From: Ostrea edulis
Lineage: Eukaryota
Length of the DNA: 64,000 nt
NCBI RefSeq assembly: GCF_947568905.1
Contig: NC_079173.1
Location: 29,202,001-29,266,000, forward strand
Reading direction: 5' to 3'
In this document: piece by piece, positions 33,701-64,000 of the stretch
Position numbering within the stretch: the first letter of the stretch is position 1
Layout of the letters: each line of letters begins with the position of its first letter
Translations under genes and position numbers: made by a program
Notes under the pieces: generated by a model
What the model was told of the DNA's origin: nothing
The model's input: only the letters and a program-made list of their open reading frames with translations
The model's database searches: none

Positions 33701-36700
33701 AGTCACGCTTGGTGTGACACTAGGAGTAACCGATGGAGTTGGTGTAACGCTTGGTGTGACACTTGGTGTAACAGATGGTGTTGGTGTGACACTTGGTGTG
33801 CCTATTAATTGAGGAAAAGATATATACAGCATCAATTTACTAATAATTGGATGAATAATGCTATTTGATACTTCCTTTTTTAAGTGAAAGTGAAGGAGAA
33901 AGTGTAAGCTTTGAAAGCAGTTGAAATAGTAGTTATCAAAATGTTATCAAGAAGTGAACAGTTCTATTTTGACAAATTTAATAACTACCATTTTGGTCCC
34001 ATACTGATACAAAATATATAACCCTGGGATCATCAAATTTAATATTTTGGTAGATGTCTTTCTGCTCTACATCACGATACGTTTATTATTTCTTATACAT
34101 GTGTGGTTGTAGAGAAGAATATTTTTGAAAATTGGTCAATTTTTGGCAGATTTTACTGGAATGGTAGTTATGAAAAAGTTGAATTTTTTTTATTGTTAAC
34201 ACACGACGGAAGTCGAACGCATACAAATTGCAGTAGGTCAATCGAGTTTACTTAAGTGGCCCAAAACATTCATAAGTATAGAGTACTTACTTTTCGTTGT
34301 CATGGTCGTTGTCGTTGTTGCTGGAAATACGAATTCAAGATATATTTACTAAACAGTGAAATAACATACGTATAGTGAATCATAAATGACAATTTTATAC
34401 ATTACTGTATACAAATCAAACATTATAAACCATTCCAAACAGTGGGAAGTGTGAGGCACAGTCACTTATGATCACTGTGTGAATTAGTTGTGACAGCATG
34501 AATTATCGAGTATGACTCAATATATGTACCTTACCGTTTTATATCAAGAAGTTCCTTTGAATTAGTGCGTAAATAAATCAAACTGAAAACTACCACACAA
34601 TAAATAATAGTTGATGTCAACAGTTCAATGATATTATTCGTCAATATATGTACTATACTAATACAACTAAACAGCAAATTAAAATGCATTATGTCCAGGG
34701 ACCAAACAATGATGTAACGGTGTACATGTTTCAGCGTCTACAATTAAAATGAACTGAATTAAAAATACATTAAACACAGAGGCAAACATATTACAAGGAA
34801 AAGGTAAGGGTTGAGCGAAAAGAAATATCCTGATATTTATAACTGCATATAATATCAAATATCACAACATTAAACTATAAACGGGGAATAAGATTAATTG
34901 CAAACAAATAGTGATTTACAGAATAAACATAAGAATAATTTTCAGAATTTGAGTTTTGGTATTCCAATATGCATACATACCCTTTTCAATACATGCTTCG
35001 ATTCCCAAGTTATTGACAGAAATGCTATCTGTTCCATCTGGTTGTGGTTTGAAGACAATCTCTAATTCTTTGCCTTTCAAGCCCGTGAAGTCTGTCTCAA
35101 CAGTACTCTCCTCACTTGGATTGGTTACGATCTGCAAATGTCATACAAAATGCATACATAAAACGTCTCAAACATGAATGATGAAAATCAATTGCACTCA
35201 AAATTACTCGGGACTACATCGTACCTCTTCCTTTCTCAACTCAGTATCCTCTGGAGTTGTAACAATGAAGGTAACGGTTTGTGTATTTTTGGTGGTCACC
35301 GTGATCTTTCCTATGGGAGATTTATCATCCTTGTCTTTAAAGACAATCCTGATTTTCACCTCCTGGCCGGGCTCGCCAGTTACCGTTCCCAGGGTACCAT
35401 TTAGAGGAGACGAAGTAGGAGACTGATGTTCGTCAACAAAGACCTCTACCAGATCGGGTAATTCGTCTATACCAGCATCGTCCAACATGGGAACAGGACA
35501 GACTGAAAGAAGGAAAAACACAAATCTCTCAACAAGCATTCTTCTTGTACCTCTACTCCATGTCTTCATTTCAAATTTGATCTTTGTAATCTTAGTCAAT
35601 TCCATACAACAATTGCTTTTATTGAGGTGTTCTGCGACACTTGTAGCAATTTGAAACATCTTCAAAGAACAATATCGTTAAACGCAATTTTTGTTGTTCT
35701 TTTAGACATATGCTTACAAGGAAGAAGGTTTGTAGTGTATTCTTCCCATATGTCGGTTTTTATACTTCATATCAAGGGTAATTCTTTTTATATACTCAAC
35801 AAACAAAGAAACGCATATTCAGATTATACATAATAATTTAATTCTTCAGTTTACATTTTATTTTTATTTTTTAAAAGTTTAAATGCAGTAAACGGTCCTA
35901 TGATCAAAATCAAACATGTCTCATGTTGCTGTGTTGAACAGATAGGAATAATATCACAGCTTCTCTCGGTCCATACAAGGTAACAATTTAATGACTGCAT
36001 TACAGTGAGTTTTAATATCGCGTATGTCCTCCGTTTGCATCAATTCCAGACTGAACACGTCTTGTCATAGAGTTAATAAGCTTGTTGATGGTAACCTGAG
36101 AGATATTGTTCCATTCCTGCAACAAGGCCTGCTCTAAATCCTGGATGGTGGTTGGTGGACTGGGACGGCGTCTAACTCATTTATCCAGCTCATCCCATAA
36201 ATGTTCAATTGGATTAAGGTCTGGTGAGAACGCTGGCCATGGAAGAACATCCACGTTGTTCGTCTGCAGAAAATCCGAGCACACCCTTGCCACATGCGGC
36301 CTTGTGTTGTCCTGTTGCAGAGTCAGATTGTGCTGATGGACAAATGGAACAGCCAAAGGAGCAAGAATTTCATCACGATATTTTCGTGCATTCATATTGC
36401 CATGAATTACGTGGAGTGGTGTTCTCCTTCCGTAAGCAATACCTCCCCACACCATTACGTTTCCACCACCAAAGCGATCTCTTTCAATGACACAATAGTC
36501 TGCAAAACGCTCATTCTTCCGGCGATACACACGTGAACGACCATCAGCTCTATACAAGTTGAATTTCGACTCATCTGTGAAGAGAACTTGATGCCATTGT
36601 CGTCGCCTCCAAATTCTAGGGCCATGCTGTCTTAACCAATCCATTCGTCCCTGGTGACGTCTCGGCGTTAGTGGATTTCCAATATATGGACGTCGTGCAC

Positions 36701-39700
36701 GAATTCCAGCTCCTCGCAGTCTGTTACGAACAGTTTGAGCACTTATACGCTGATTTCCTCGTCCAGCAATTGTAGCAGCAGTCTCTACAGCAGTTTTGAA
36801 TCGACTGTACAGGTGTTGAAGGCGGATCTGACGGTCCTGCCTGGGAGTGGTAACCCGCAGACGGACAGTTTTTGGCCTGTCATCTGTGCTTCCCAGCTGG
36901 TGGAGACGAACATTTGACCGCTGCACAGTCGATTGATATACTCCAAATGCAGTTGCAACAACCTGTTGCGTAGCTCCGGCTAGTAGCATCGTTACAACCC
37001 GGTTACGTTCATCTTTGTTTAGGCACGACATTGCACATCAAAGATGCCTCAAAATCTTAATTATGGGTTTGATAGGAGTAGTTGTTGTTTCCCCAAATCC
37101 AAAATATTAATGACAATAGACCCCCGATTTACAAGAAACCGTGCAAAACACTCTTTTTATCAACATGATTAACCAAGCGAAACATTTCGACACTGGCGTT
37201 TGAAAGGGCTATGCTGTTTTAAATAGGCCACAGGTATCCATTGATAGACGTGATAGTTATTCCATGTACTGTTTCAAGATTTCTTTGATGAGTGAAAAAT
37301 ATGCCTTTCTTTTTTTGTTGAGTATATAATGCGTTACAATCACGAGCGGTTTACGGAATACAAATGCCAGAAGGTAGTATCCATGTCACATACCGTAGGG
37401 GCTTCTCGGTGGAAAGGGTGAGATTGTTGATGAGTAGGGTGGACCTGGTGGTGTGGTAGTCGTTGGTGTGGACACAGTAGTTGGTGTACTAACAGCTTCT
37501 GAAAAACAAAAACAGGCATCAAATGTCAAAGTATATCCTCCGGTTTTATTCATTTACGGTGTATGTCAACTCAAAAAGCAATTACCAAAACAATTAAAAC
37601 ACAAATATGGACAAAGAGAAAAGAGACGGAAAGAGACAGACCGACGGACATATCAACAGAAAAGCTGAATATGAGGAAAATAGAGAAATAAAACAGCGGG
37701 TATACCTTTTTCAATACATGCTTCGATTCCCAAGTTATTGACAGAAATGCTTTCTGTTTCCTCTGCTTGTGGTTTGAAGACAATCTCTAATTCTTTGCCT
37801 TCCAAGCCCGTGAAGTCTGTCTCAACAGTACTCTCCTCACTTGGATTGGTTACGATCTGCAAATGTCATACAAAATGCATACATAAAACGTCTCAAACAT
37901 GAATGAAGATAATCATTTGCATTCAAAATCACTCGGGACTACATCGTACCTCTTCCTTTCTCAACTCAGTATCCTCTGGAGTTGTAACAATGAAGGTAAC
38001 GGTTTGTGTATTTTTGGTGGTCACCGTGATCTTTCCTATGGGAGATTTATCATCCTTGTCTTTAAAGACAATCCTGATTTTCACCTCCTGGCCGGGCTCG
38101 CCAGTTACCGTTCCCAGGGTACCATTTAGAGGAGACGAAGTAGGAGACTTATGTTCGTCAACAAAGACCTCTACCAGATCGGGTAATTCGTCTGTACCTG
38201 CATCGTCCAACATGGGAACAGGACAGACTGAAAGAAGGAAAAACTCAAATCTCTCAACAAGCATTCTTCTTCTACCTCTATTCCATTTCTTCATTCCAAA
38301 TTTCATCTTTGTAATCTTAGTCAGTTTCATACAATAATTGCTTTTATTGAGGTGTTCTGCGACACTCGTACAAATTTGAAACATCTTCAAAGATGTCAGA
38401 ATTTGAACACTTTTAAAAAAGCATTTAAAAACACATCTTTTAAGACTTGCATATCACTAGTATTATAGGTGGTTAAATCTTTATGGTTTCTTTACCACCA
38501 TTTTAACATGACCTTTTCCAGTTTATAATTGTATATTCATTTCAACTATTGTATTTTATACCATTTGATTGTGCGGCGTGGAACTTTTTTCATGCATATC
38601 ATGTGTTAGATTTTAGTAATTTTACTTCACATTAATCATGTTTTTCTAGCATTGTTTTGATATTATCTGTCTTAGTGCTATTATAATTTCCTTTCATTCC
38701 GTTTACAACATTCTGTATCATTTTTATTGTGTGCAGCGCTTTAGAGTGGTTATTTATAGTCATATAGGGCGCTATATAAATAAATATTAACATTACTATT
38801 ATTAAAGAACAATATCGCGTAAAACGCAATTTTTGGTGTTCCTTTACACATAAGCTTCTAAGGAGGAAAGTTTATAGTCTATTCTTGCCATACTTCGGGT
38901 TCTGTACTTCATATCAAAGGCAAATTCTTTTTATATAATGCGTTACAATCACCAGCGGTTTATGCAATACAAATGCCAGAAGGTAGTATCCATGTCACAT
39001 ACCGTACGGGCTAGTCGGTGCAGATGGTGAGATTGTTGTTGAGTAGGGTGGACCTGGTGGTGTGGTAGTCGTTGGTGTGGACACAGTAGTTGGTGTACTA
39101 ACAGCTTCTGAAAAACAAAAACATGCATCAAATGTCAAAGTATATCCTCCGGTTTTATTCATTTATGGTGTATGTCAACTCAAAAAGCAATTACCAAGAC
39201 AATTAAAACACTAAATGGACAGAGAGAAAAGAGACGGAAAGAGACAGACCGACGGACATATCAACAGAAAAGCCGAATATGAGGAAAATAGAGAAATAAA
39301 ACAGCGGGTATACCTTTTTCAATACATGCTTCGATTCCCAAGTTATTGACAGAAATGCTTTCTGTTTCCTCTGCTTGTGGTTTGAAGACAATCTCTAATT
39401 CTTTGCCTTCCAAGCCCGTGAAGTCTGTCTCAACAGTACTCTCCTCACTTGGATTGGTTACGATCTGCAAATGTCATACAAAATGCATACATAAAACGTC
39501 TCAAACATGAATGAAGATAATCATTTGCATTCAAAATCACTCGGGAATACATCCTACCTCTTCCTTTCTCAACTCAGTATCTTCTGGAGTGGTAACAATG
39601 AAGGTAACGGTTTGTGTATTTTTGGTGGTCACCGTGATCTTTCCTATGGGAGATTTATCATCCTTGTCTTTAAAGACAATCCTGATTTTCACCTCCCGGC

Positions 39701-42700
39701 CGGGCTCGCCAGTTACCGTTCCCAGGGTACCATTTAGAGGAGACGAACTAGGAGACTTATGTTCGTCAACAAAGACCTCTACCAGATCGGGTAATTCATC
39801 TGTACCTGCATCGTCCAACATGGGAACAGGACAGACTGAAAGAAGGAAAAACACAAATCTCTCAACAAGCATTCCTCTTCTACCTCTATTCCATTTCTTC
39901 ATTCCAAATTTCATCTTTGTAATCTTAGTCAGTTTCATACAATAATTGCTTTTATTGAGGTGTTCTGCGACACTCGTACAAATTTGAAACATCTTCAAAG
40001 ATGTCAGAATTTGAACACTTTTAAAAAAGCATTTAAAAACACATCTTTTAAGACTTGCATATCACTAGTATTATAGGTGGTTAAATCTTTATGGTTTCTT
40101 TACCATCATTTTAACATGACCTTTTCCAGTTTATAATTGTATATTCATTTCAACTATTGTATTTTATACCATTTGATTGTACGGCGTGGAACTTTTTTCA
40201 TGCATATCATGTGTTAGATTTTAGTAATTTTACTTCACATTATTCATGTTTTTCTAGCATTGTTTTGATATTATCTGTCCTAGTGCTATTATAATTTCCT
40301 TTCATTACGTTTATAACGTGCTGTATCATTGTTATTGTGTGCAGCGCTTTAGAGTGGTTATTTTTGGTGTTCCTTTACACATAAGCTTCTAAAGAGGAAA
40401 GTTGATAGTCTATTCTTGCCATACTTCGGGTTCTGTACTTCATATCAAAGGGAAATTCTTTTTATATAATGCGTTACAATCACCAGCGGTTTATGCAATA
40501 CAAATGCCAGAAGGTAGTATCCATGTCACATACCGTACGGGCTAGTCGGTGCAGATGGTGAGATTGTTGTTGAGTAGGGTGGACCTGGTGGTGTGGTAGT
40601 CGTTGGTGTGGACACAGTAGTTGGTGTACTAACAGCTTCTGAAAAACAAAAACATGCATCAAATGTCAAAGTATATCCTCCGGTTTTATTCATGTATGGT
40701 GTATGTCAACTCAAAAAGCAATTACCAAGACAATTAAAACACAAAAATGGACAGAGAGAAAAGAGACGGAAAGAGACAGACCGACGGACATATCAACAGA
40801 AAAGTCGAATATGAGGAAAATAGAGAAATAAAACAACGGGTATACCTTTTTCAATACATGCTTCGATTCCCAAGTTATTGACAGAAATGCTTTCTGTTTC
40901 CTCTGGTTCTGGTTTGAAGACAATCTCTAATTCTTTGCCTTCCAAGCCCGTGAAGTCTGTCTCAACAGTACTCTCCTCACTTGGATTGGTTACGATCTGC
41001 AAATGTCATACAAAATGCATACATAAAACGTCTCAAACATGAATGAAGATAATCATTTGCATTCAAAATCACTCGGAACTACATCGTACCTCTTCCTTTC
41101 TCAACTCAGTATCTTCTGGAGTGGTAACAATGAAGGTAACGGTTTGTGTATTTTTGGTGGTCACCGTGATCTTTCCTATGGGAGATTTATCATCCTTGTC
41201 TTTAAAGACAATCCTGATTTTCACCTCCTGGCCGGGCTCGCCAGTTACCGTTCCCAGGGTACCATTTAGAGGAGACGAAGTAGGAGACTTATGTTCGTCA
41301 ACAAAGACCTCTACCAGATCGGGTAATTCGTCTGTACCTGCATCGTCCAACATGGGAACAGGACAGACTGAAAGAAGGAAAAACTCAAATCTCTCAACAA
41401 GCATTCTTCTTCTACCTCTATTCCATTTCTTCATTCCAAATTTCATCTTTGTAATCTTAGTCAGTTTCATACAATAATTGCTTTTATTGAGGTGTTCTGC
41501 GACACTCGTACAAATTTGAAACATCTTCAAAGATGTCAGAATTTGAACACTTTTAAAAAAGCATTTAAAAACACATCTTTTAAGACTTGCATATCACTAG
41601 TATTATAGGTGGTTAAATCTTTATGGTTTCTTTACCACCATTTTAACATGACCTTTTCCAGTTTATAATTGTATATTCATTTCAACTATTGTATTTTATA
41701 CCATTTGATTGTGCGGCGTGGAACTTTTTTCATGCATATCATGTGTTAGATTTTAGTAATTTTACTTCACATTAATCATGTTTTTCTAGCATTGTTTTGA
41801 TATTATCTGTCTTAGTGCTATTATAATTTCCTTTCATTCCGTTTACAACATTCTGTATCATTTTTATTGTGTGCAGCGCTTTAGAGTGGTTATTTATAGT
41901 CATATAGGGCGCTATATAAATAAATATTAACATTACTATTATTAAAGAACAATATCGCGTAAAACGCAATTTTTGGTGTTCCTTTACACATAAGCTTCTA
42001 AGGAGGAAAGTTTATAGTCTATTCTTGCCATACTTCGGGTTCTGTACTTCATATCAAAGGCAAATTCTTTTTATATAATGCGTTACAATCACCAGCGGTT
42101 TATGCAATACAAATGCCAGAAGGTAGTATCCATGTCACATACCGTACGGGCTAGTCGGTGCAGATGGTGAGATTGTTGTTGAGTAGGGTGGACCTGGTGG
42201 TGTGGTAGTCGTTGGTGTGGACACAGTAGTTGGTGTACTAACAGCTTCTGAAAAACAAAAACATGCATCAAATGTCAAAGTATATCCTCCGGTTTTATTC
42301 ATTTATGGTGTATGTCAACTCAAAAAGCAATTACCAAGACAATTAAAACACTAAATGGACAGAGAGAAAAGAGACGGAAAGAGACAGACCGACGGACATA
42401 TCAACAGAAAAGCCGAATATGAGGAAAATAGAGAAATAAAACAGCGGGTATACCTTTTTCAATACATGCTTCGATTCCCAAGTTATTGACAGAAATGCTT
42501 TCTGTTTCCTCTGCTTGTGGTTTGAAGACAATCTCTAATTCTTTGCCTTCCAAGCCCGTGAAGTCTGTCTCAACAGTACTCTCCTCACTTGGATTGGTTA
42601 CGATCTGCAAATGTCATACAAAATGCATACATAAAACGTCTCAAACATGAATGAAGATAATCATTTGCATTCAAAATCACTCGGGAATACATCCTACCTC

Positions 42701-45700
42701 TTCCTTTCTCAACTCAGTATCTTCTGGAGTGGTAACAATGAAGGTAACGGTTTGTGTATTTTTGGTGGTCACCGTGATCTTTCCTATGGGAGATTTATCA
42801 TCCTTGTCTTTAAAGACAATCCTGATTTTCACCTCCCGGCCGGGCTCGCCAGTTACCGTTCCCAGGGTACCATTTAGAGGAGACGAACTAGGAGACTTAT
42901 GTTCGTCAACAAAGACCTCTACCAGATCGGGTAATTCATCTGTACCTGCATCGTCCAACATGGGAACAGGACAGACTGAAAGAAGGAAAAACACAAATCT
43001 CTCAACAAGCATTCCTCTTCTACCTCTATTCCATTTCTTCATTCCAAATTTCATCTTTGTAATCTTAGTCAGTTTCATACAATAATTGCTTTTATTGAGG
43101 TGTTCTGCGACACTCGTACAAATTTGAAACATCTTCAAAGATGTCAGAATTTGAACACTTTTAAAAAAGCATTTAAAAACACATCTTTTAAGACTTGCAT
43201 ATCACTAGTATTATAGGTGGTTAAATCTTTATGGTTTCTTTACCATCATTTTAACATGACCTTTTCCAGTTTATAATTGTATATTCATTTCAACTATTGT
43301 ATTTTATACCATTTGATTGTACGGCGTGGAACTTTTTTCATGCATATCATGTGTTAGATTTTAGTAATTTTACTTCACATTATTCATGTTTTTCTAGCAT
43401 TGTTTTGATATTATCTGTCCTAGTGCTATTATAATTTCCTTTCATTACGTTTATAACGTGCTGTATCATTGTTATTGTGTGCAGCGCTTTAGAGTGGTTA
43501 TTTTTGGTGTTCCTTTACACATAAGCTTCTAAAGAGGAAAGTTGATAGTCTATTCTTGCCATACTTCGGGTTCTGTACTTCATATCAAAGGGAAATTCTT
43601 TTTATATAATGCGTTACAATCACCAGCGGTTTATGCAATACAAATGCCAGAAGGTAGTATCCATGTCACATACCGTACGGGCTAGTCGGTGCAGATGGTG
43701 AGATTGTTGTTGAGTAGGGTGGACCTGGTGGTGTGGTAGTCGTTGGTGTGGACACAGTAGTTGGTGTACTAACAGCTTCTGAAAAACAAAAACATGCATC
43801 AAATGTCAAAGTATATCCTCCGGTTTTATTCATGTATGGTGTATGTCAACTCAAAAAGCAATTACCAAGACAATTAAAACACAAAAATGGACAGAGAGAA
43901 AAGAGACGGAAAGAGACAGACCGACGGACATATCAACAGAAAAGTCGAATATGAGGAAAATAGAGAAATAAAACAACGGGTATACCTTTTTCAATACATG
44001 CTTCGATTCCCAAGTTATTGACAGAAATGCTTTCTGTTTCCTCTGGTTCTGGTTTGAAGACAATCTCTAATTCTTTGCCTTCCAAGCCCGTGAAGTCTGT
44101 CTCAACAGTACTCTCCTCACTTGGATTGGTTACGATCTGCAAATGTCATACAAAATGCATACATAAAACGTCTCAAACATGAATGAAGATAATCATTTGC
44201 ATTCAAAATCACTCGGAACTACATCGTACCTCTTCCTTTCTCAACTCAGTATCTTCTGGAGTGGTAACAATGAAGGTAACGGTTTGTGTATTTTTGGTGG
44301 TCACCGTGATCTTTCCTATGGGAGATTTATCATCCTTGTCTTTAAAGACAATCCTGATTTTCACCTCCTGGCCGGGCTCGCCAGTTACCGTTCCCAGGGT
44401 ACCATTTAGAGGAGACGAAGTAGGAGACTTATGTTCGTCAACAAAGACCTCTACCAGATCGGGTAATTCGTCTGTACCAGCATCGTCCAACATGGGAACA
44501 GGACAGACTGAAAGAAGGAAAAACACAAATCTCTCAACAAGCATTCCTCTTCTACCTCTATTCCATTTCTTCATTCCAAATTTGATCTTTGTAATCTTAG
44601 TCAGTTTCATACAATAATTGCTTTTATTGAGGTGTTCTGCGACACTCGTACAAATTTGAAACATCTTCAAAGATGTCAGAATTTGAACACTTTTAAAAAA
44701 GCATTTAAAAACACATCTTTTAAGACTTGCATATCACTAGTATTATAGGTGGTTAAATCTTTATGGTTTCTTTACCATCATTTTAACATGACCTTTTCCA
44801 GTTTATAATTGTATATTCATTTCAACTATTGTATTTTATACCATTTGATTGTACGGCGTGGAACTTTTTTCATGCATATCATGTGTTAGATTTTAGTAAT
44901 TTTACTTCACATTAATCATGTTTTTCTAGCATTATTTTGATATTATCTGTCTTAGTGCTATTATAATTTCCTTTCATTCCGTTTACAACATTCTGTATCA
45001 TTTTTATTGTGTGCAGCGCTTTAGAGTGGTTATTTATAGTCATATAGGGCGCTATATAAATAAATATTAACATTACTATTATTAAAGAACAATATCGCGT
45101 AAAACGCAATTTTTGGTGTTCCTTTACACATAAGCTTCTAAGGAGGAAAGTTTATAGTCTATTCTTGCCATACTTCGGGTTCTGTACTTCATATCAAAGG
45201 CAAATTCTTTTTATATAATGCGTTACAATCACCAGCGGTTTATGCAATACAAATGCCAGAAGGTAGTATCCATGTCACATACCGTACGGGCTAGTCGGTG
45301 CAGATGGTGAGATTGTTGTTGAGTAGGGTGGACCTGGTGGTGTGGTAGTCGTTGGTGTGGACACAGTAGTTGGTGTACTAACAGCTTCTGAAAAACAAAA
45401 ACATGCATCAAATGTCAAAGTATATCCTCCGGTTTTATTCATTTATGGTGTATGTCAACTCAAAAAGCAATTACCAAGACAATTAAAACACTAAATGGAC
45501 AGAGAGAAAAGAGACGGAAAGAGACAGACCGACGGACATATCAACAGAAAAGCCGAATATGAGGAAAATAGAGAAATAAAACAGCGGGTATACCTTTTTC
45601 AATACATGCTTCGATTCCCAAGTTATTGACAGAAATGCTTTCTGTTTCCTCTGCTTGTGGTTTGAAGACAATCTCTAATTCTTTGCCTTCCAAGCCCGTG

Positions 45701-51700: not shown

Positions 51701-54700
51701 AGAAAAGAGACGGAAAGAGACAGACCGACGGACATATCAACAGAAAAGTCGAATATGAGGAAAATAGAGAAATAAAACAGCGGGTATACCTTTTTCAATA
51801 CATGCTTCGATTCCCAAGTTATTGACAGAAATGCTTTCTGTTTCCTCTGCTTGTGGTTTGAAGACAATCTCTAATGCTTTGCCTTCCAAGCCTGTGAAGT
51901 CTGTCTCAACAGTACTCTCCTCACTTGGATTGGTTACGATCTGCAAATGTCATACAAAATGCATACATAAAACGTCTCAAACATGAATGAAGATAATCAT
52001 TTGCATTCAAAATCACTCGGAACTACATCGTACCTCTTCCTTTCTCAACTCAGTATCCTCTGGAGTTGTAACAATGAAGGTAACGGTTTGTGTATTTTTG
52101 GTGGTCACCGTGATCTTTCCTATGGGAGATTTATCATCCTTGTCTTTAAAGACAATCCTGATTTTCACCTCCTGGCCGGGCTCGCCAGTTACCGTTCCCA
52201 GGGTACCATTTAGAGGAGACGAAGTAGGAGACTTATGTTCGTCAACAAAGACCTCTACCAGATCGGGTAATTCGTCTGTACCAGCATCGTCCAACATGGG
52301 AACAGGACAGACTGAAAGAAGGAAAAACTCAAATCTCTCAACAAGCATTCTTCTTCTACCTCTACTCCATGTCTTCATTCCAAATTTCATCTTTGTAATC
52401 TTAGTCAGTTTCATACAACAATTGCTTTTATTTAGGTGTTCTTCGACACTCGTACAAATTTGAAACATTTTCAAAGATGTCAGAATTTGAAAAGTTTTAA
52501 AAAACATTTAAAAACACATCTTTTAAGACTTGCATATCATTAGTATTATAGGTGGTTAATCTTCATGGTTTCTTTACAATCATTTTAACATGACCTTTTC
52601 AAGTGTATAATTGTATATTCATTTCAACTATTGTATTTTATACCATTTGATTGTACGGCGTGGAACTTTTTTCATGCATATCATGTGTTAGATTTTAGTA
52701 ATTTTACTTCACATCATTCATGTTTTTCTAGCATTGTTCTGACATTATCTGTCTTAGTGCTATTATAATTTCCTTTCATTACGTTTATAACATTCTGTAT
52801 CATTGTTATTGTCTGCAGCGCTTTAGAGTGGCTATTTTTGGTGTTCCTTTACACATAAGCTTCTAAGGAGGAAAGTTTATAGTCTATTCTTGCCATATTT
52901 CGGGTTCTGTACTTCATATCAAAGGGAAATTCTGCTTATATAATGCGTTACAATCACCAGCGTTTTATGCAATACAAATGCCAGAAGGTAGTATCCATGT
53001 CACATACCGTACGGGCTAGTCGGTGCAGATGGTGAGATTGTTGTTGAGTAGGGTGGACCTGGTGGTGTGGTAGTCGTTGGTGTGGACACAGTAGTTGGTG
53101 TACTAACAGCTTCTGAAAAACAAAAACATGCATCAAATGTCAAAGTATATCCTCCGGTTTTATTCATTTATGGTGTATGTCAACTCAAAAAGCAATTACC
53201 AAGACAATTAAAACACAAAAATGGACAGAGAGAAAAGAGACGGAAAGAGACAGACCGACGGACATATCAACAGAAAAGTCGAATATGAGGAAAATAGAGA
53301 AATAAAACAGCGGGTATACCTTTTTCAATACATGCTTCGATTCCCAAGTTATTGACAGAAATGCTTTCTGTTTCCTCTGCTTGTGGTTTGAAGACAATCT
53401 CTAATGCTTTGCCTTCCAAGCCTGTGAAGTCTGTCTCAACAGTACTCTCCTCACTTGGATTGGTTACGATCTGCAAATGTCATACAAAATGCATACATAA
53501 AACGTCTCAAACATGAATGAAGATAATCATTTGCATTCAAAATCACTCGGAACTACATCGTACCTCTTCCTTTCTCAACTCAGTATCCTCTGGAGTTGTA
53601 ACAATGAAGGTAACGGTTTGTGTATTTTTGGTGGTCACCGTGATCTTTCCTATGGGAGATTTATCATCCTTGTCTTTAAAGACAATCCTGATTTTCACCT
53701 CCTGGCCGGGCTCGCCAGTTACCGTTCCCAGGGTACCATTTAGAGGAGACGAAGTAGGAGACTTATGTTCGTCAACAAAGACCTCTACCAGATCGGGTAA
53801 TTCGTCTGTACCTGCATCGTCCAACATGGGAACAGGACAGACTGAAAGAAGGAAAAACTCAAATCTCTCAACAAGCATTCTTCTTCTACCTCTACTCCAT
53901 GTCTTCATTCCAAATTTCATCTTTGTAATCTTAGTCAGTTTCATACAACAATTGCTTTTATTTAGGTGTTCTTCGACACTCGTACAAATTTGAAACATTT
54001 TCAAAGATGTCAGAATTTGAAAAGTTTTAAAAAACATTTAAAAACACATCTTTTAAGACTTGCATATCATTAGTATTATAGGTGGTTAATCTTCATGGTT
54101 TCTTTACAATCATTTTAACATGACCTTTTCAAGTGTATAATTGTATATTCATTTCAACTATTGTATTTTATACCATTTGATTGTACGGCGTGGAACTTTT
54201 TTCATGCATATCATGTGTTAGATTTTAGTAATTTTACTTCACATCATTCATGTTTTTCTAGCATTGTTCTGACATTATCTGTCTTAGTGCTATTATAATT
54301 TCCTTTCATTACGTTTATAACATTCTGTATCATTGTTATTGTCTGCAGCGCTTTAGAGTGGCTATTTTTGGTGTTCCTTTACACATAAGCTTCTAAGGAG
54401 GAAAGTTTATAGTCTATTCTTGCCATATTTCGGGTTCTGTACTTCATATCAAAGGGAAATTCTGCTTATATAATGCGTTACAATCACCAGCGTTTTATGC
54501 AATACAAATGCCAGAAGGTAGTATCCATGTCACATACCGTACGGGCTAGTCGGTGCAGATGGTGAGATTGTTGTTGAGTAGGGTGGACCTGGTGGTGTGG
54601 TAGTCGTTGGTGTGGACACAGTAGTTGGTGTACTAACAGCTTCTGAAAAACAAAAACATGCATCAAATGTCAAAGTATATCCTCCGGTTTTATTCATTTA

Positions 54701-57700
54701 TGGTGTATGTCAACTCAAAAAGCAATTACCAAGACAATTAAAACACAAAAATGGACAGAGAGAAAAGAGACGGAAAGAGACAGACCGACGGACATATCAA
54801 CAGAAAAGTCGAATATGAGGAAAATAGAGAAATAAAACAGCGGGTATACCTTTTTCAATACATGCTTCGATTCCCAAGTTATTGACAGAAATGCTTTCTG
54901 TTTCCTCTGCTTGTGGTTTGAAGACAATCTCTAATGCTTTGCCTTCCAAGCCTGTGAAGTCTGTCTCAACAGTACTCTCCTCACTTGGATTGGTTACGAT
55001 CTGCAAATGTCATACAAAATGCATACATAAAACGTCTCAAACATGAATGAAGATAATCATTTGCATTCAAAATCACTCGGAACTACATCGTACCTCTTCC
55101 TTTCTCAACTCAGTATCCTCTGGAGTTGTAACAATGAAGGTAACGGTTTGTGTATTTTTGGTGGTCACCGTGATCTTTCCTATGGGAGATTTATCATCCT
55201 TGTCTTTAAAGACAATCCTGATTTTCACCTCCTGGCCGGGCTCGCCAGTTACCGTTCCCAGGGTACCATTTAGAGGAGACGAAGTAGGAGACTTATGTTC
55301 GTCAACAAAGACCTCTACCAGATCGGGTAATTCGTCTGTACCAGCATCGTCCAACATGGGAACAGGACAGACTGAAAGAAGGAAAAACTCAAATCTCTCA
55401 ACAAGCATTCTTCTTCTACCTCTACTCCATGTCTTCATTCCAAATTTCATCTTTGTAATCTTAGTCAGTTTCATACAACAATTGCTTTTATTTAGGTGTT
55501 CTTCGACACTCGTACAAATTTGAAACATTTTCAAAGATGTCAGAATTTGAAAAGTTTTAAAAAACATTTAAAAACACATCTTTTAAGACTTGCATATCAT
55601 TAGTATTATAGGTGGTTAATCTTCATGGTTTCTTTACAATCATTTTAACATGACCTTTTCAAGTGTATAATTGTATATTCATTTCAACTATTGTATTTTA
55701 TACCATTTGATTGTACGGCGTGGAACTTTTTTCATGCATATCATGTGTTAGATTTTAGTAATTTTACTTCACATCATTCATGTTTTTCTAGCATTGTTCT
55801 GACATTATCTGTCTTAGTGCTATTATAATTTCCTTTCATTACGTTTATAACATTCTGTATCATTGTTATTGTCTGCAGCGCTTTAGAGTGGCTATTTTTG
55901 GTGTTCCTTTACACATAAGCTTCTAAGGAGGAAAGTTTATAGTCTATTCTTGCCATATTTCGGGTTCTGTACTTCATATCAAAGGGAAATTCTGCTTATA
56001 TAATGCGTTACAATCACCAGCGTTTTATGCAATACAAATGCCAGAAGGTAGTATCCATGTCACATACCGTACGGGCTAGTCGGTGCAGATGGTGAGATTG
56101 TTGTTGAGTAGGGTGGACCTGGTGGTGTGGTAGTCGTTGGTGTGGACACAGTAGTTGGTGTACTAACAGCTTCTGAAAAACAAAAACATGCATCAAATGT
56201 CAAAGTATATCCTCCGGTTTTATTCATTTATGGTGTATGTCAACTCAAAAAGCAATTACCAAGACAATTAAAACACAAAAATGGACAGAGAGAAAAGAGA
56301 CGGAAAGAGACAGACCGACGGACATATCAACAGAAAAGTCGAATATGAGGAAAATAGAGAAATAAAACAGCGGGTATACCTTTTTCAATACATGCTTCGA
56401 TTCCCAAGTTATTGACAGAAATGCTTTCTGTTTCCTCTGCTTGTGGTTTGAAGACAATCTCTAATGCTTTGCCTTCCAAGCCTGTGAAGTCTGTCTCAAC
56501 AGTACTCTCCTCACTTGGATTGGTTACGATCTGCAAATGTCATACAAAATGCATACATAAAACGTCTCAAACATGAATGAAGATAATCATTTGCATTCAA
56601 AATCACTCGGAACTACATCGTACCTCTTCCTTTCTCAACTCAGTATCCTCTGGAGTTGTAACAATGAAGGTAACGGTTTGTGTATTTTTGGTGGTCACCG
56701 TGATCTTTCCTATGGGAGATTTATCATCCTTGTCTTTAAAGACAATCCTGATTTTCACCTCCTGGCCGGGCTCGCCAGTTACCGTTCCCAGGGTACCATT
56801 TAGAGGAGACGAAGTAGGAGACTTATGTTCGTCAACAAAGACCTCTACCAGATCGGGTAATTCGTCTGTACCAGCATCGTCCAACATGGGAACAGGACAG
56901 ACTGAAAGAAGGAAAAACTCAAATCTCTCAACAAGCATTCTTCTTCTACCTCTACTCCATGTCTTCATTCCAAATTTCATCTTTGTAATCTTAGTCAGTT
57001 TCATACAACAATTGCTTTTATTTAGGTGTTCTTCGACACTCGTACAAATTTGAAACATTTTCAAAGATGTCAGAATTTGAAAAGTTTTAAAAAACATTTA
57101 AAAACACATCTTTTAAGACTTGCATATCATTAGTATTATAGGTGGTTAATCTTCATGGTTTCTTTACAATCATTTTAACATGACCTTTTCAAGTGTATAA
57201 TTGTATATTCATTTCAACTATTGTATTTTATACCATTTGATTGTACGGCGTGGAACTTTTTTCATGCATATCATGTGTTAGATTTTAGTAATTTTACTTC
57301 ACATCATTCATGTTTTTCTAGCATTGTTCTGACATTATCTGTCTTAGTGCTATTATAATTTCCTTTCATTACGTTTATAACATTCTGTATCATTGTTATT
57401 GTCTGCAGCGCTTTAGAGTGGCTATTTTTGGTGTTCCTTTACACATAAGCTTCTAAGGAGGAAAGTTTATAGTCTATTCTTGCCATATTTCGGGTTCTGT
57501 ACTTCATATCAAAGGGAAATTCTGCTTATATAATGCGTTACAATCACCAGCGTTTTATGCAATACAAATGCCAGAAGGTAGTATCCATGTCACATACCGT
57601 ACGGGCTAGTCGGTGCAGATGGTGAGATTGTTGTTGAGTAGGGTGGACCTGGTGGTGTGGTAGTCGTTGGTGTGGACACAGTAGTTGGTGTACTAACAGC

Positions 57701-60700
57701 TTCTGAAAAACAAAAACATGCATCAAATGTCAAAGTATATCCTCCGGTTTTATTCATTTATGGTGTATGTCAACTCAAAAAGCAATTACCAAGACAATTA
57801 AAACACAAAAATGGACAGAGAGAAAAGAGACGGAAAGAGACAGACCGACGGACATATCAACAGAAAAGTCGAATATGAGGAAAATAGAGAAATAAAACAG
57901 CGGGTATACCTTTTTCAATACATGCTTCGATTCCCAAGTTATTGACAGAAATGCTTTCTGTTTCCTCTGCTTGTGGTTTGAAGACAATCTCTAATGCTTT
58001 GCCTTCCAAGCCTGTGAAGTCTGTCTCAACAGTACTCTCCTCACTTGGATTGGTTACGATCTGCAAATGTCATACAAAATGCATACATAAAACGTCTCAA
58101 ACATGAATGAAGATAATCATTTGCATTCAAAATCACTCGGAACTACATCGTACCTCTTCCTTTCTCAACTCAGTATCCTCTGGAGTTGTAACAATGAAGG
58201 TAACGGTTTGTGTATTTTTGGTGGTCACCGTGATCTTTCCTATGGGAGATTTATCATCCTTGTCTTTAAAGACAATCCTGATTTTCACCTCCTGGCCGGG
58301 CTCGCCAGTTACCGTTCCCAGGGTACCATTTAGAGGAGACGAAGTAGGAGACTTATGTTCGTCAACAAAGACCTCTACCAGATCGGGTAATTCGTCTGTA
58401 CCAGCATCGTCCAACATGGGAACAGGACAGACTGAAAGAAGGAAAAACTCAAATCTCTCAACAAGCATTCTTCTTCTACCTCTACTCCATGTCTTCATTC
58501 CAAATTTCATCTTTGTAATCTTAGTCAGTTTCATACAACAATTGCTTTTATTTAGGTGTTCTTCGACACTCGTACAAATTTGAAACATTTTCAAAGATGT
58601 CAGAATTTGAAAAGTTTTAAAAAACATTTAAAAACACATCTTTTAAGACTTGCATATCATTAGTATTATAGGTGGTTAATCTTCATGGTTTCTTTACAAT
58701 CATTTTAACATGACCTTTTCAAGTGTATAATTGTATATTCATTTCAACTATTGTATTTTATACCATTTGATTGTACGGCGTGGAACTTTTTTCATGCATA
58801 TCATGTGTTAGATTTTAGTAATTTTACTTCACATCATTCATGTTTTTCTAGCATTGTTCTGACATTATCTGTCTTAGTGCTATTATAATTTCCTTTCATT
58901 ACGTTTATAACATTCTGTATCATTGTTATTGTCTGCAGCGCTTTAGAGTGGCTATTTTTGGTGTTCCTTTACACATAAGCTTCTAAGGAGGAAAGTTTAT
59001 AGTCTATTCTTGCCATATTTCGGGTTCTGTACTTCATATCAAAGGGAAATTCTGCTTATATAATGCGTTACAATCACCAGCGTTTTATGCAATACAAATG
59101 CCAGAAGGTAGTATCCATGTCACATACCGTACGGGCTAGTCGGTGCAGATGGTGAGATTGTTGTTGAGTAGGGTGGACCTGGTGGTGTGGTAGTCGTTGG
59201 TGTGGACACAGTAGTTGGTGTACTAACAGCTTCTGAAAAACAAAAACATGCATCAAATGTCAAAGTATATCCTCCGGTTTTATTCATTTATGGTGTATGT
59301 CAACTCAAAAAGCAATTACCAAGACAATTAAAACACAAAAATGGACAGAGAGAAAAGAGACGGAAAGAGACAGACCGACGGACATATCAACAGAAAAGTC
59401 GAATATGAGGAAAATAGAGAAATAAAACAGCGGGTATACCTTTTTCAATACATGCTTCGATTCCCAAGTTATTGACAGAAATGCTTTCTGTTTCCTCTGC
59501 TTGTGGTTTGAAGACAATCTCTAATGCTTTGCCTTCCAAGCCTGTGAAGTCTGTCTCAACAGTACTCTCCTCACTTGGATTGGTTACGATCTGCAAATGT
59601 CATACAAAATGCATACATAAAACGTCTCAAACATGAATGAAGATAATCATTTGCATTCAAAATCACTCGGAACTACATCGTACCTCTTCCTTTCTCAACT
59701 CAGTATCCTCTGGAGTTGTAACAATGAAGGTAACGGTTTGTGTATTTTTGGTGGTCACCGTGATCTTTCCTATGGGAGATTTATCATCCTTGTCTTTAAA
59801 GACAATCCTGATTTTCACCTCCTGGCCGGGCTCGCCAGTTACCGTTCCCAGGGTACCATTTAGAGGAGACGAAGTAGGAGACTTATGTTCGTCAACAAAG
59901 ACCTCTACCAGATCGGGTAATTCGTCTGTACCTGCATCGTCCAACATGGGAACAGGACAGACTGAAAGAAGGAAAAACTCAAATCTCTCAACAAGCATTC
60001 TTCTTCTACCTCTACTCCATGTCTTCATTCCAAATTTCATCTTTGTAATCTTAGTCAGTTTCATACAACAATTGCTTTTATTTAGGTGTTCTTCGACACT
60101 CGTACAAATTTGAAACATTTTCAAAGATGTCAGAATTTGAAAAGTTTTAAAAAACATTTAAAAACACATCTTTTAAGACTTGCATATCATTAGTATTATA
60201 GGTGGTTAATCTTCATGGTTTCTTTACAATCATTTTAACATGACCTTTTCAAGTGTATAATTGTATATTCATTTCAACTATTGTATTTTATACCATTTGA
60301 TTGTACGGCGTGGAACTTTTTTCATGCATATCATGTGTTAGATTTTAGTAATTTTACTTCACATCATTCATGTTTTTCTAGCATTGTTCTGACATTATCT
60401 GTCTTAGTGCTATTATAATTTCCTTTCATTACGTTTATAACATTCTGTATCATTGTTATTGTCTGCAGCGCTTTAGAGTGGCTATTTTTGGTGTTCCTTT
60501 ACACATAAGCTTCTAAGGAGGAAAGTTTATAGTCTATTCTTGCCATATTTCGGGTTCTGTACTTCATATCAAAGGGAAATTCTGCTTATATAATGCGTTA
60601 CAATCACCAGCGTTTTATGCAATACAAATGCCAGAAGGTAGTATCCATGTCACATACCGTACGGGCTAGTCGGTGCAGATGGTGAGATTGTTGTTGAGTA

Positions 60701-63700
60701 GGGTGGACCTGGTGGTGTGGTAGTCGTTGGTGTGGACACAGTAGTTGGTGTACTAACAGCTTCTGAAAAACAAAAACATGCATCAAATGTCAAAGTATAT
60801 CCTCCGGTTTTATTCATTTATGGTGTATGTCAACTCAAAAAGCAATTACCAAGACAATTAAAACACAAAAATGGACAGAGAGAAAAGAGACGGAAAGAGA
60901 CAGACCGACGGACATATCAACAGAAAAGTCGAATATGAGGAAAATAGAGAAATAAAACAGCGGGTATACCTTTTTCAATACATGCTTCGATTCCCAAGTT
61001 ATTGACAGAAATGCTTTCTGTTTCCTCTGCTTGTGGTTTGAAGACAATCTCTAATGCTTTGCCTTCCAAGCCTGTGAAGTCTGTCTCAACAGTACTCTCC
61101 TCACTTGGATTGGTTACGATCTGCAAATGTCATACAAAATGCATACATAAAACGTCTCAAACATGAATGAAGATAATCATTTGCATTCAAAATCACTCGG
61201 AACTACATCGTACCTCTTCCTTTCTCAACTCAGTATCCTCTGGAGTTGTAACAATGAAGGTAACGGTTTGTGTATTTTTGGTGGTCACCGTGATCTTTCC
61301 TATGGGAGATTTATCATCCTTGTCTTTAAAGACAATCCTGATTTTCACCTCCTGGCCGGGCTCGCCAGTTACCGTTCCCAGGGTACCATTTAGAGGAGAC
61401 GAAGTAGGAGACTTATGTTCGTCAACAAAGACCTCTACCAGATCGGGTAATTCGTCTGTACCAGCATCGTCCAACATGGGAACAGGACAGACTGAAAGAA
61501 GGAAAAACTCAAATCTCTCAACAAGCATTCTTCTTCTACCTCTACTCCATGTCTTCATTCCAAATTTCATCTTTGTAATCTTAGTCAGTTTCATACAACA
61601 ATTGCTTTTATTTAGGTGTTCTTCGACACTCGTACAAATTTGAAACATTTTCAAAGATGTCAGAATTTGAAAAGTTTTAAAAAACATTTAAAAACACATC
61701 TTTTAAGACTTGCATATCATTAGTATTATAGGTGGTTAATCTTCATGGTTTCTTTACAATCATTTTAACATGACCTTTTCAAGTGTATAATTGTATATTC
61801 ATTTCAACTATTGTATTTTATACCATTTGATTGTACGGCGTGGAACTTTTTTCATGCATATCATGTGTTAGATTTTAGTAATTTTACTTCACATCATTCA
61901 TGTTTTTCTAGCATTGTTCTGACATTATCTGTCTTAGTGCTATTATAATTTCCTTTCATTACGTTTATAACATTCTGTATCATTGTTATTGTCTGCAGCG
62001 CTTTAGAGTGGCTATTTTTGGTGTTCCTTTACACATAAGCTTCTAAGGAGGAAAGTTTATAGTCTATTCTTGCCATATTTCGGGTTCTGTACTTCATATC
62101 AAAGGGAAATTCTGCTTATATAATGCGTTACAATCACCAGCGTTTTATGCAATACAAATGCCAGAAGGTAGTATCCATGTCACATACCGTACGGGCTAGT
62201 CGGTGCAGATGGTGAGATTGTTGTTGAGTAGGGTGGACCTGGTGGTGTGGTAGTCGTTGGTGTGGACACAGTAGTTGGTGTACTAACAGCTTCTGAAAAA
62301 CAAAAACATGCATCAAATGTCAAAGTATATCCTCCGGTTTTATTCATTTATGGTGTATGTCAACTCAAAAAGCAATTACCAAGACAATTAAAACACAAAA
62401 ATGGACAGAGAGAAAAGAGACGGAAAGAGACAGACCGACGGACATATCAACAGAAAAGTCGAATATGAGGAAAATAGAGAAATAAAACAGCGGGTATACC
62501 TTTTTCAATACATGCTTCGATTCCCAAGTTATTGACAGAAATGCTTTCTGTTTCCTCTGCTTGTGGTTTGAAGACAATCTCTAATGCTTTGCCTTCCAAG
62601 CCTGTGAAGTCTGTCTCAACAGTACTCTCCTCACTTGGATTGGTTACGATCTGCAAATGTCATACAAAATGCATACATAAAACGTCTCAAACATGAATGA
62701 AGATAATCATTTGCATTCAAAATCACTCGGAACTACATCGTACCTCTTCCTTTCTCAACTCAGTATCCTCTGGAGTTGTAACAATGAAGGTAACGGTTTG
62801 TGTATTTTTGGTGGTCACCGTGATCTTTCCTATGGGAGATTTATCATCCTTGTCTTTAAAGACAATCCTGATTTTCACCTCCTGGCCGGGCTCGCCAGTT
62901 ACCGTTCCCAGGGTACCATTTAGAGGAGACGAAGTAGGAGACTTATGTTCGTCAACAAAGACCTCTACCAGATCGGGTAATTCGTCTGTACCAGCATCGT
63001 CCAACATGGGAACAGGACAGACTGAAAGAAGGAAAAACTCAAATCTCTCAACAAGCATTCTTCTTCTACCTCTACTCCATGTCTTCATTCCAAATTTCAT
63101 CTTTGTAATCTTAGTCAGTTTCATACAACAATTGCTTTTATTTAGGTGTTCTTCGACACTCGTACAAATTTGAAACATTTTCAAAGATGTCAGAATTTGA
63201 AAAGTTTTAAAAAACATTTAAAAACACATCTTTTAAGACTTGCATATCATTAGTATTATAGGTGGTTAATCTTCATGGTTTCTTTACAATCATTTTAACA
63301 TGACCTTTTCAAGTGTATAATTGTATATTCATTTCAACTATTGTATTTTATACCATTTGATTGTACGGCGTGGAACTTTTTTCATGCATATCATGTGTTA
63401 GATTTTAGTAATTTTACTTCACATCATTCATGTTTTTCTAGCATTGTTCTGACATTATCTGTCTTAGTGCTATTATAATTTCCTTTCATTACGTTTATAA
63501 CATTCTGTATCATTGTTATTGTCTGCAGCGCTTTAGAGTGGCTATTTTTGGTGTTCCTTTACACATAAGCTTCTAAGGAGGAAAGTTTATAGTCTATTCT
63601 TGCCATATTTCGGGTTCTGTACTTCATATCAAAGGGAAATTCTGCTTATATAATGCGTTACAATCACCAGCGTTTTATGCAATACAAATGCCAGAAGGTA

Positions 63701-63822: not shown

Positions 63823-64000
63823 CTGAAAAACAAAAACATGCATCAAATGTCAAAGTATATCCTCCGGTTTTATTCATTTATGGTGTATGTCAACTCAAAA
63901 AGCAATTACCAAGACAATTAAAACACAAAAATGGACAGAGAGAAAAGAGACGGAAAGAGACAGACCGACGGACATATCAACAGAAAAGTCGAATATGAGG

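What the first reader, a model, noticed from the sequence alone, without database searches (positions are those of the whole stretch)
34981..63021. Unrecognised ~143-aa two-cysteine domain repeated 18 times like beads on Pro/Thr linkers
Seen: VCPVPMLDD...KIRIVF...IGKITV...TVTFIV...|IVTNP...ELEIVF...[11 protein letters not shown] has one Cys at each end, alternating hydrophobic beta-strand patterns, acidic character and an N-G-T sequon. Established: discoidin/F5-8 type C (galactose-binding-like) domains start C-x-x-x-x-M and end ...ELxGC with a disulfide joining the termini. Inference: this is a highly diverged discoidin-like beta-sandwich or a new family, and it would give a multivalent lectin or cross-linking array.
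Basis: partly seen in the sequence, partly recalled or inferred. Interest (0 to 1): 0.75.

Follow-up and report, generated by a model that had tools for sequence, protein, structure and literature searches.

The report
Discoidin-like domain array in oyster mucin
A giant oyster mucin gene carries 20 near-identical copies of a 143-residue domain that matches no catalogued family but is predicted to fold like discoidin-type sugar-binding modules, so the mucin may carry its own lectin-like beads; no binding has been tested.

Summary
On the minus strand, 18 units in the window (20 in the genome, all in this one array) each hold three exons with intact AG/GT sites: a 35-aa Pro/Thr linker, a 93-aa exon and a 50-aa exon. 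All three splice joints appear in a 564-nt cyclic contig of two public runs that look like RNA.

The 143-aa domain has no Pfam or PDB sequence match. An exhaustive HMMER search found relatives only as fragmentary "uncharacterized" oyster models (C. gigas, C. angulata, C. virginica) and a few unnamed contigs.

AlphaFold models of two oyster relatives are confident (pLDDT 82-88). They match only galactose-binding-domain-like jelly rolls over the whole domain: IFT25 (Z 12), CBM32/F5-8 type C, DOC domains and F-type lectins. It does not hold for family membership, because Pfam finds nothing and hhalign gives under 1% probability.

dN/dS against another oyster is 0.36, and 0.12 for the N-terminal 44 residues.

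The terminal disulfide and any lectin activity are untested. I did not fold the window's own spliced domain, because the joined step was left out by rule. I rate it a new sequence family of a known fold in an unusual 20-fold mucin array, of moderate interest.

The parts
34981..64000 (-). Tandem array of domain-plus-linker units. 18 complete domains lie in the window. The array runs on about 2.1 kb past the window end, to 20 copies in all.
62500..63822 (-). Unit 1: linker exon 63822-63718, exon A 63021-62744, exon B 62650-62500
   Evidence: AG/GT at every exon
60970..62292 (-). Unit 2: linker 62292-62188, exon A 61491-61214, exon B 61120-60970
59440..60762 (-). Unit 3: linker 60762-60658, exon A 59961-59684, exon B 59590-59440
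57910..59232 (-). Unit 4: linker 59232-59128, exon A 58431-58154, exon B 58060-57910
56380..57702 (-). Unit 5, the reference unit: linker 57702-57598, exon A 56901-56624, exon B 56530-56380. Introns are 696, 93 and 207 nt.
   Evidence: the splice joints are seen in contigs of runs X1 and X2
54850..56172 (-). Unit 6: linker 56172-56068, exon A 55371-55094, exon B 55000-54850
53320..54642 (-). Unit 7: linker 54642-54538, exon A 53841-53564, exon B 53470-53320
51790..53112 (-). Unit 8: linker 53112-53008, exon A 52311-52034, exon B 51940-51790
50260..51582 (-). Unit 9: linker 51582-51478, exon A 50781-50504, exon B 50410-50260
48733..50055 (-). Unit 10: linker 50055-49951, exon A 49254-48977, exon B 48883-48733
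47125..48526 (-). Unit 11: linker 48526-48422, exon A 47646-47369, exon B 47275-47125
45594..46918 (-). Unit 12: linker 46918-46814, exon A 46115-45838, exon B 45744-45594
43986..45387 (-). Unit 13: linker 45387-45283, exon A 44507-44230, exon B 44136-43986
42454..43778 (-). Unit 14: linker 43778-43674, exon A 42975-42698, exon B 42604-42454
40846..42247 (-). Unit 15: linker 42247-42143, exon A 41367-41090, exon B 40996-40846
39314..40638 (-). Unit 16: linker 40638-40534, exon A 39835-39558, exon B 39464-39314
37706..39107 (-). Unit 17: linker 39107-39003, exon A 38227-37950, exon B 37856-37706
34981..37498 (-). Unit 18, the 3'-most: linker 37498-37394, exon A 35502-35225, exon B 35131-34981. 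Its long intron is enlarged to 1891 nt by a Tc1/mariner insertion.

Best explanation
Anatomy (shown): the region is the central part of a very large minus-strand oyster mucin gene. It encodes 20 tandem copies of a 143-residue, acidic, two-cysteine domain, each followed by a 35-residue Ser/Thr/Pro linker. Each unit of 178 codons starts and ends in phase 1, so units can be gained, lost or skipped without breaking the frame. The units are spliced as predicted in public run contigs, and the coding sequence is under purifying selection between oyster species.

Fold (shown on orthologues): the domain is a lineage-restricted sequence family. It adopts the galactose-binding-domain-like jelly-roll fold of discoidin/F5-8 type C, CBM32, IFT25 and DOC domains. 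The conserved N-terminal 45 residues supply the first strands, and the two Cys sit at the two chain ends.

Mechanism (inferred): the O-glycosylated linkers hold the domains apart like beads on a stiff string. This would present about 20 identical weak binding sites, most likely for glycans, that act together by avidity. They could cross-link mucus polymers or capture glycan-coated particles and microbes on oyster mucosal surfaces.

Odds: fold about 0.85, glycan binding about 0.4.
For: Exons, frames and splice sites.

Splice joints: a 564-nt cyclic contig in two runs.

Copy number and absence of paralogues: 20 copies, none elsewhere in the genome.

Orthologues: another oyster contig has the same three-exon layout. 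dN/dS is 0.36 overall and 0.12 for the N-terminal 44 codons.

Fold: models reach pLDDT 87.9 with pTM 0.81, and pLDDT 81.7 with pTM 0.77. Foldseek gives 267 PDB chains at E<=0.001. In the VIA-align exhaustive search the top 50 rows all score Z>=8, the best is IFT25 at Z 12.0 with rmsd 2.7 over 116 residues, and the rows I recognise are all galactose-binding-domain-like folds. ESM Atlas matches are F5/8 type C clusters at TM about 0.7 over residues 5-132.

Mucin context: Pro/Ser/Val/Thr repeat exons lie on both sides, with two LDLa-type exons upstream, one of them a Pfam match.

End motifs: a canonical discoidin exon of this genome starts C-K-V-P-M and others end L-G-C. The domain starts C-P-V-P-M and ends E-A-C.
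Against: No binding data exist. The same fold also serves protein-protein contacts (IFT25, DOC), lipid binding and collagen binding.

The domain has no Trp or Tyr, residues that I recall usually line sugar sites in CBM32 and discoidin domains.

The models are of Crassostrea orthologues (56% and 47-53% identity to the window exons), not of the window's own spliced sequence.

The runs showing the joints are only guessed to be RNA, come from one study, and are 95-99% rather than 100% identical.

It is not shown that the array, the LDLa exons and the flanking mucin exons belong to one transcript, and neither end of the gene was found.

Ten units are 100% identical including introns, so the copy number could be an assembly estimate.
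Confidence: 0.6

Rival explanations
1. The fold is as described, but the domains are not lectins. They would act as protein-protein or homotypic contact modules, or simply as folded spacers that stiffen or reversibly cross-link the mucin. The CysD and SEA modules of other mucins would be the analogy.
For: The closest structural neighbours are IFT25 and DOC domains, which bind proteins. There are no aromatic Trp or Tyr residues. The strongest constraint falls on the N-terminal segment and on the K-D-x-D-D-x-S-P-x-G-K-I segment, not on an obvious sugar-site motif.
Against: Most neighbours in the structure lists are carbohydrate-binding modules, many from mucin-degrading enzymes. Twenty identical copies on spacers is the classic avidity design for weak glycan binding.
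Confidence: 0.25
2. The domain is a fast-evolving offshoot of the canonical F5/8 type C (discoidin) family, not an independent family of the galactose-binding-like superfamily. This concerns ancestry and can be true together with either functional reading.
For: It shares the C-x-V-P-M start and a Cys just after the last strand with this genome's canonical discoidin exons. The only hhalign alignment places the first strand and the following strand in the register expected from the fold. ESM Atlas neighbours are F5/8 type C clusters.
Against: PF00754 gives no hit even at E<=10. hhalign probability is 0.75%. The W-L-Q-V-D and T-Q-G motifs seen in this genome's discoidin exons are absent. The best structural match is IFT25, not a classical discoidin domain.
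Confidence: 0.35
3. It is an acidic calcium- or mineral-binding module of a mantle or shell-associated glycoprotein.
For: Net charge is -16 per domain, and a D-K-D-D loop is conserved. From memory, many domains of this fold hold a structural calcium ion.
Against: There are no poly-Asp or poly-Glu runs typical of shell-matrix proteins. The flanks are classical mucin repeats. No tissue data are available.
Confidence: 0.07
4. It is an assembly artefact or a dead repeat that is not translated.
For: Ten units are 100% identical including introns. Public annotations in other oysters hold only fragments of 143-190 aa.
Against: All 54 exons are open with intact splice sites. Spliced contigs are seen in two runs. 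dN/dS is 0.36 against another oyster. DNA runs from several studies hold the unit.
Confidence: 0.03

Closest known systems
F5/8 type C (discoidin) domain / CBM32, Pfam PF00754, clan GBD
   Same: Predicted fold over the whole 130-140 residues. Size is similar. One Cys lies near each chain end, with a C-x-V-P-M start like this genome's own discoidin exon. It is extracellular.
   Different: There is no sequence-profile match. The W-L-Q-V-D and T-Q-G motifs seen in this genome's discoidin exons are absent, and there is no Trp or Tyr. The disulfide is not shown.
IFT25 / HSPB11 (PDB 2yc2, 1tvg, 8ruy)
   Same: Best structural match: Z 12.0, rmsd 2.7 A over 116 of 132 residues, end to end.
   Different: From my own knowledge, IFT25 is a single-domain cytoplasmic protein of the ciliary transport machinery that binds IFT27. 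Sequence identity is 10-20% with no sequence-level signal. It has no repeats and no mucin context.
Tandem CBM32 arrays of bacterial mucin-degrading enzymes, such as the Clostridium perfringens GH84/GH89 and ZmpB entries listed
   Same: Several copies of the same fold in one chain, in proteins described as acting on mucin glycans. Avidity through multivalency is my inference.
   Different: Those are bacterial, attached to catalytic domains and recognisable by Pfam. This one is an animal mucin with 20 copies on O-glycosylated linkers and no enzyme domain seen.
Animal secreted discoidin-domain glycoproteins: MFG-E8/lactadherin with its Pro/Thr-rich insert, and insect hemolectin/hemocytin (from my own knowledge, not tested here)
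   Same: Discoidin-fold modules combined with mucin-like or adhesive extracellular architecture.
   Different: Those have one or two canonical discoidin domains, not a 20-fold array of a divergent family.
CysD and SEA modules of vertebrate mucins (from my own knowledge)
   Same: Small folded domains that interrupt the Pro/Thr/Ser regions of a mucin.
   Different: Their folds and cysteine patterns are unrelated.

Membership tests
F5/8 type C (discoidin), PF00754 | Match to the family profile at or above Pfam's gathering score | tested here: not met
   No PF00754 hit at E<=10 for exon A, exon B, or the whole-domain orthologues P0011, P0042:1-137, P0015 and P0019. hhalign against 8 canonical discoidin exons of this genome gives probability 0.75% and E 0.075.
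F5/8 type C (discoidin), PF00754 | Distorted jelly-roll beta-sandwich of about 130-150 residues | tested here: met
   Models of orthologues match over the whole domain: Z 8-12 to IFT25, CBM32, discoidin I, DDR1 and neuropilin b1, and TM about 0.7 to F5/8 type C clusters. The window's own spliced domain was not folded.
F5/8 type C (discoidin), PF00754 | Disulfide between a Cys at the N-terminus and a Cys at the C-terminus | tested here: inconclusive
   Both Cys are present in all 18 copies and in oyster orthologues. The foldable orthologue starts after the first Cys, and model residues 1-6 have pLDDT under 50. Distant relatives lack the N-terminal segment and some lack the C-terminal Cys.
F5/8 type C (discoidin), PF00754 | Ligand binding by loops at the end of the sandwich opposite the termini | not testable with these tools
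   No model coordinates and no binding assay are available. The domain has no Trp or Tyr.
Galactose-binding-domain-like superfamily (Pfam clan GBD) | The shared fold, with structural neighbours drawn from the clan | tested here: met
   The top 50 rows of two exhaustive structure searches score Z>=7.6 and Z>=8.0. The rows I recognise belong to this superfamily.
Mucin | Long Pro/Thr/Ser-rich tandem repeats in the same gene | tested here: inconclusive
   Minus-strand Pro/Ser/Val/Thr exons lie on both sides for more than 50 kb, and the 35-aa linkers are 50% Ser/Thr and 26% Pro. One continuous transcript and O-glycosylation are not shown.

The most novel reading that the evidence does not exclude
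The domain is a new, oyster-restricted lectin family. The gene would then be a 'lectin-mucin' hybrid: a gel-forming or surface mucin carrying its own array of 20 glycan-binding beads. The array could cross-link mucus or select and trap algal and microbial particles, and its copy number could be tuned by unequal crossing-over or cassette skipping.
Probability: 0.3. Interest if true: 0.7.

Novelty: new variant of a known kind. Interest (0 to 1): 0.5.

Why it matters
The domain fits no catalogued sequence family, and public oyster annotations show it only as short "uncharacterized" fragments. Giving it a fold, boundaries and a gene context makes it testable. If it binds glycans, it would be a mucin with built-in multivalent lectin activity. 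That bears on how bivalve mucus captures and sorts particles and microbes, a process in which the bivalve literature implicates soluble mucosal lectins (my recollection, not read here). It is also a clear case of a symmetric three-exon cassette amplified to 20 copies, some identical down to the introns, which means copy number can change quickly.

Tried and rejected
- Pfam on each exon, on the linker and on whole-domain orthologues: only sub-threshold noise (RimM PRC barrel, Wzt_C, TMEM131L Ig, GH49).
- PDB sequence searches with exon A and with the family profile: nothing usable.
- ESM Atlas feature searches: no usable hit for exon A and only scores below 0.85 for the orthologue.
- Word-index protein searches: only ORF fragments from oyster contigs and the fragmentary Crassostrea models.
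- Exhaustive HMMER search: besides 7 true relatives, 24 long bacterial proteins hit only on a 20-45-residue stretch resembling their G-K-T-I-K-V-x-V-S-F-T-D-D repeat. I treat this as local resemblance, not homology.
- Family profile against other beta-rich exons of the same gene (L006:1149-1424, L004:9122-9394, window 7240-7617): no match.
- hhalign against canonical discoidin exons: not significant.
- Papers: no hit for the Crassostrea locus or accession names, or for the run accession of a distant relative. The oyster, mucin and discoidin search returned only seven unrelated-looking titles, none of which I read.
- Earlier scan notes: none on this domain.
- Not done: folding or searching the window's own joined exon A + exon B sequence, because the joined step is left out by rule. 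I used referenced orthologues and exon-by-exon rows instead.
- Not done: complex prediction was not used, because no binding between separate proteins is claimed.
- Not found: the ends of the gene, within about 30 kb upstream and 20 kb downstream of the window.
Full report
**What is there**

The window is G000:C10:29202001-29266000 of an 895-Mb genome that earlier scan notes call an oyster. On the minus strand, between 34981 and the window end, lies a tandem array. Its unit holds three exons:
- a 105-nt exon encoding a 35-residue linker that is 50% Ser/Thr and 26% Pro;
- a 278-nt exon A (93 codons counting the split first codon);
- a 151-nt exon B (50 codons).

All 18 units in the window have open frames and AG/GT at all 54 exon borders.

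Exon A plus exon B give the 143-residue domain. It has one Cys at position 2, one Cys five residues from the end, one N-G-T sequon, no Trp or Tyr, and a net charge of -16.

**Copy number and array structure**

A protein search and a profile search of the whole genome find 20 copies, all in this array and none elsewhere. Two of them lie just past the window end.

Upstream of the 5'-most copy sits a decayed exon A with an in-frame stop, the relic of a 21st unit.

Ten units of exactly 1530 bp are 100% identical, introns included. Four dimers of 1608+1532 bp follow, 99-100% identical between alternate units. The last unit is stretched by a Tc1/mariner insertion in its long intron. Amplification is therefore very recent, or the array is kept uniform by crossing-over. 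The exact number rests on the assembly.

**Is it expressed and spliced as read?**

Two runs of one study, flagged only as "RNA?", each hold one 564-nt contig that lies on the three exons and nowhere in the introns. It carries the joints 56530/56624 (skips 93), 56901/57598 (skips 696) and 56380 back to 57702, which joins exon B to the linker exon of the next unit. All are GT..AG on the minus strand. 564 equals 534 plus a 30-nt k-mer overlap, which is what a cyclic unitig of a tandemly repeated spliced unit looks like. The DNA-type runs cover the introns and show none of these joints. I take this as good, though not independent-replicate, evidence for the exon model.

**Relatives**

Pfam finds nothing for either exon. 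The word-index search returns only ORF fragments.

A profile of exon A was run with HMMER against 1.84 billion representative proteins. It finds seven true relatives. The long bacterial hits match only a short stretch resembling their own G-K-T-I-K-V-x-V-S-F-T-D-D repeat.

The named relatives are fragmentary models:
- C. virginica LOC111113999, 143 aa;
- C. gigas LOC105326793, 152 and 190 aa;
- C. angulata LOC128163027.

No paper in the library names them.

Two transcript-like contigs of unknown origin (P0015/P0039 and P0019) carry 2-3 copies of a shorter, roughly 100-residue version. It lacks the N-terminal 45 residues and does not keep the Cys consistently.

A 1.7-kb metagenome contig from another oyster has the same linker, exon A and exon B layout. 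Against it, dN/dS is 0.36 for the domain and 0.12 for the first 44 codons. The N-terminal segment is therefore a constrained part of the domain, not a spacer.

**Fold**

The window's own 143-residue sequence was not folded or searched as one piece.

Instead I folded two referenced orthologues, with the window exons as separate alignment rows:
- the C. virginica core (105 aa): pLDDT 87.9, pTM 0.81, eight strands;
- C. gigas P0042:1-137, the whole domain minus its first five residues: pLDDT 81.7, pTM 0.77. Here the N-terminal segment adds a short helix and two strands at moderate confidence, and residues 1-6 are unplaced.

The structure searches agree:
- Foldseek gives 267 PDB chains at E<=0.001 for the long model.
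- The Foldseek-independent search of 48,161 representative chains gives IFT25 first (Z 12.0, rmsd 2.7 A, 116 residues, model 10-134 on chain 7-134). CBM32 modules, DOC domains, GH29 C-terminal domains, galactose oxidase domain 1, F-type lectin, DDR1, neuropilin, discoidin I and muskelin follow, and all 50 rows score Z>=8 (for the core).
- ESM Atlas neighbours are F5/8 type C clusters at TM 0.68-0.72 over residues 5-132.

**Is it a discoidin domain?**

By fold, yes. By sequence family, not demonstrably.
- PF00754 does not match.
- This genome has canonical discoidin exons elsewhere on the same chromosome. An alignment of eight of them compared with the family alignment by hhalign gives 0.75% probability.
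- Suggestive but not proof: one canonical exon starts C-K-V-P-M-G-M-E and three others end L-G-C (a fourth ends L-D-C), against C-P-V-P-M-L-D-D and I-E-A-C here. The one hhalign alignment also has the register expected from the fold.
- The terminal disulfide is plausible but could not be measured. My recollection is that the chain ends of this fold lie side by side.

**Surroundings**

Downstream, at lower coordinates, the same strand carries cassettes of Pro/Ser/Val/Thr exons through the rest of the window and at least 20 kb beyond. Upstream lie, in order:
- two LDLa-type exons, one a Pfam match at E 1.2e-5;
- two further beta-rich exons with no family match;
- Pro/Ser/Val/Thr open frames of more than 2,500 and about 1,300 codons.

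I read this as one very large mucin gene. Neither end was found, and no single transcript has been shown.

**How it probably works**

Shown: the anatomy, the splice joints in run contigs, the constraint and the fold.

Inferred: the linkers are O-glycosylated and extended, so the protein presents about 20 identical small jelly-roll modules along a stiff stalk. Most neighbours of this fold in extracellular settings bind glycans weakly, and copy number gives avidity. My best reading, at about 0.4, is a multivalent glycan-binding array that cross-links mucus or captures glycan-coated particles and microbes. The main rival, at about 0.25, is a non-lectin contact or spacer module. The nearest structures (IFT25, DOC) bind proteins and the domain lacks the usual aromatic sugar-site residues. 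An acidic calcium- or mineral-binding role is a minor rival. The artefact or pseudogene reading is largely excluded.

**Novelty and score**

This is a new sequence family of a well-known fold, apparently confined to oysters plus a few unplaced relatives, and it is amplified to 20 copies inside a mucin. I found no description of it. I rate it a new variant of a known kind, interest 0.5. It would rise if glycan binding were shown.

Noticed in passing
window 36177-37031 (-): A 284-codon Tc1/mariner transposase frame (DDE_3, HTH_Tnp_Tc3_2, HTH_23) is inserted in the long intron of the 3'-most unit. It stretches that unit's spacing to 2725 bp against 1530-1608 bp for the others.
   Followed up: partly
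window 57065-57421, and the same stretch of every unit's long intron: Contig depth in DNA-type runs is 20-100 times that of the flanking unit sequence, with many variant contigs. This points to a dispersed high-copy repeat (SINE- or MITE-like) sitting inside the intron.
   Followed up: no
L004:2376-2475 (-), = G000:C10:29268376-29268475: A decayed exon A relic upstream of the 5'-most unit. It reads C-P-V-P-I-stop, then a recognisable N-terminal segment (profile E 8e-5), then another stop. It is the dead 21st unit at the array edge.
   Followed up: partly
L004:7400-7687 (-) and L004:6840-7103 (-): Two cysteine-rich exons lie just upstream of the array. The first matches Pfam Ldl_recept_a (E 1.2e-5). 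The second has an LDLa-like Cys/Asp pattern but no Pfam hit.
   Followed up: partly
L006:1149-1424 (-), L004:9122-9394 (-), window 7240-7617 (-): Three further beta-strand-rich exons sit between mucin repeats, with no Pfam match and no match to the domain profile. The one in the window starts with a C...M-L-D motif reminiscent of the domain's start. These may be other divergent sandwich domains.
   Followed up: partly
window 34981-64000 plus L004:1-2150: The array has two layers: ten 1530-bp monomers that are 100% identical, then four 1608+1532-bp dimers that are 99-100% identical between alternate units and about 93% identical within a dimer.
   Followed up: yes
L006:2384-10000 and L007:3664-7533 (-): Uninterrupted Pro/Ser/Val/Thr open frames of more than 2,500 and about 1,300 codons lie upstream. 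In contrast, the 3' half of the gene encodes similar repeats as many short exon cassettes.
   Followed up: no
G000:C10:24.956-24.999 Mb (L017-L023): A cluster of canonical F5/8 type C exons lies on the same chromosome, about 4.2 Mb from the array. Two of the matches contain a stop codon.
   Followed up: no
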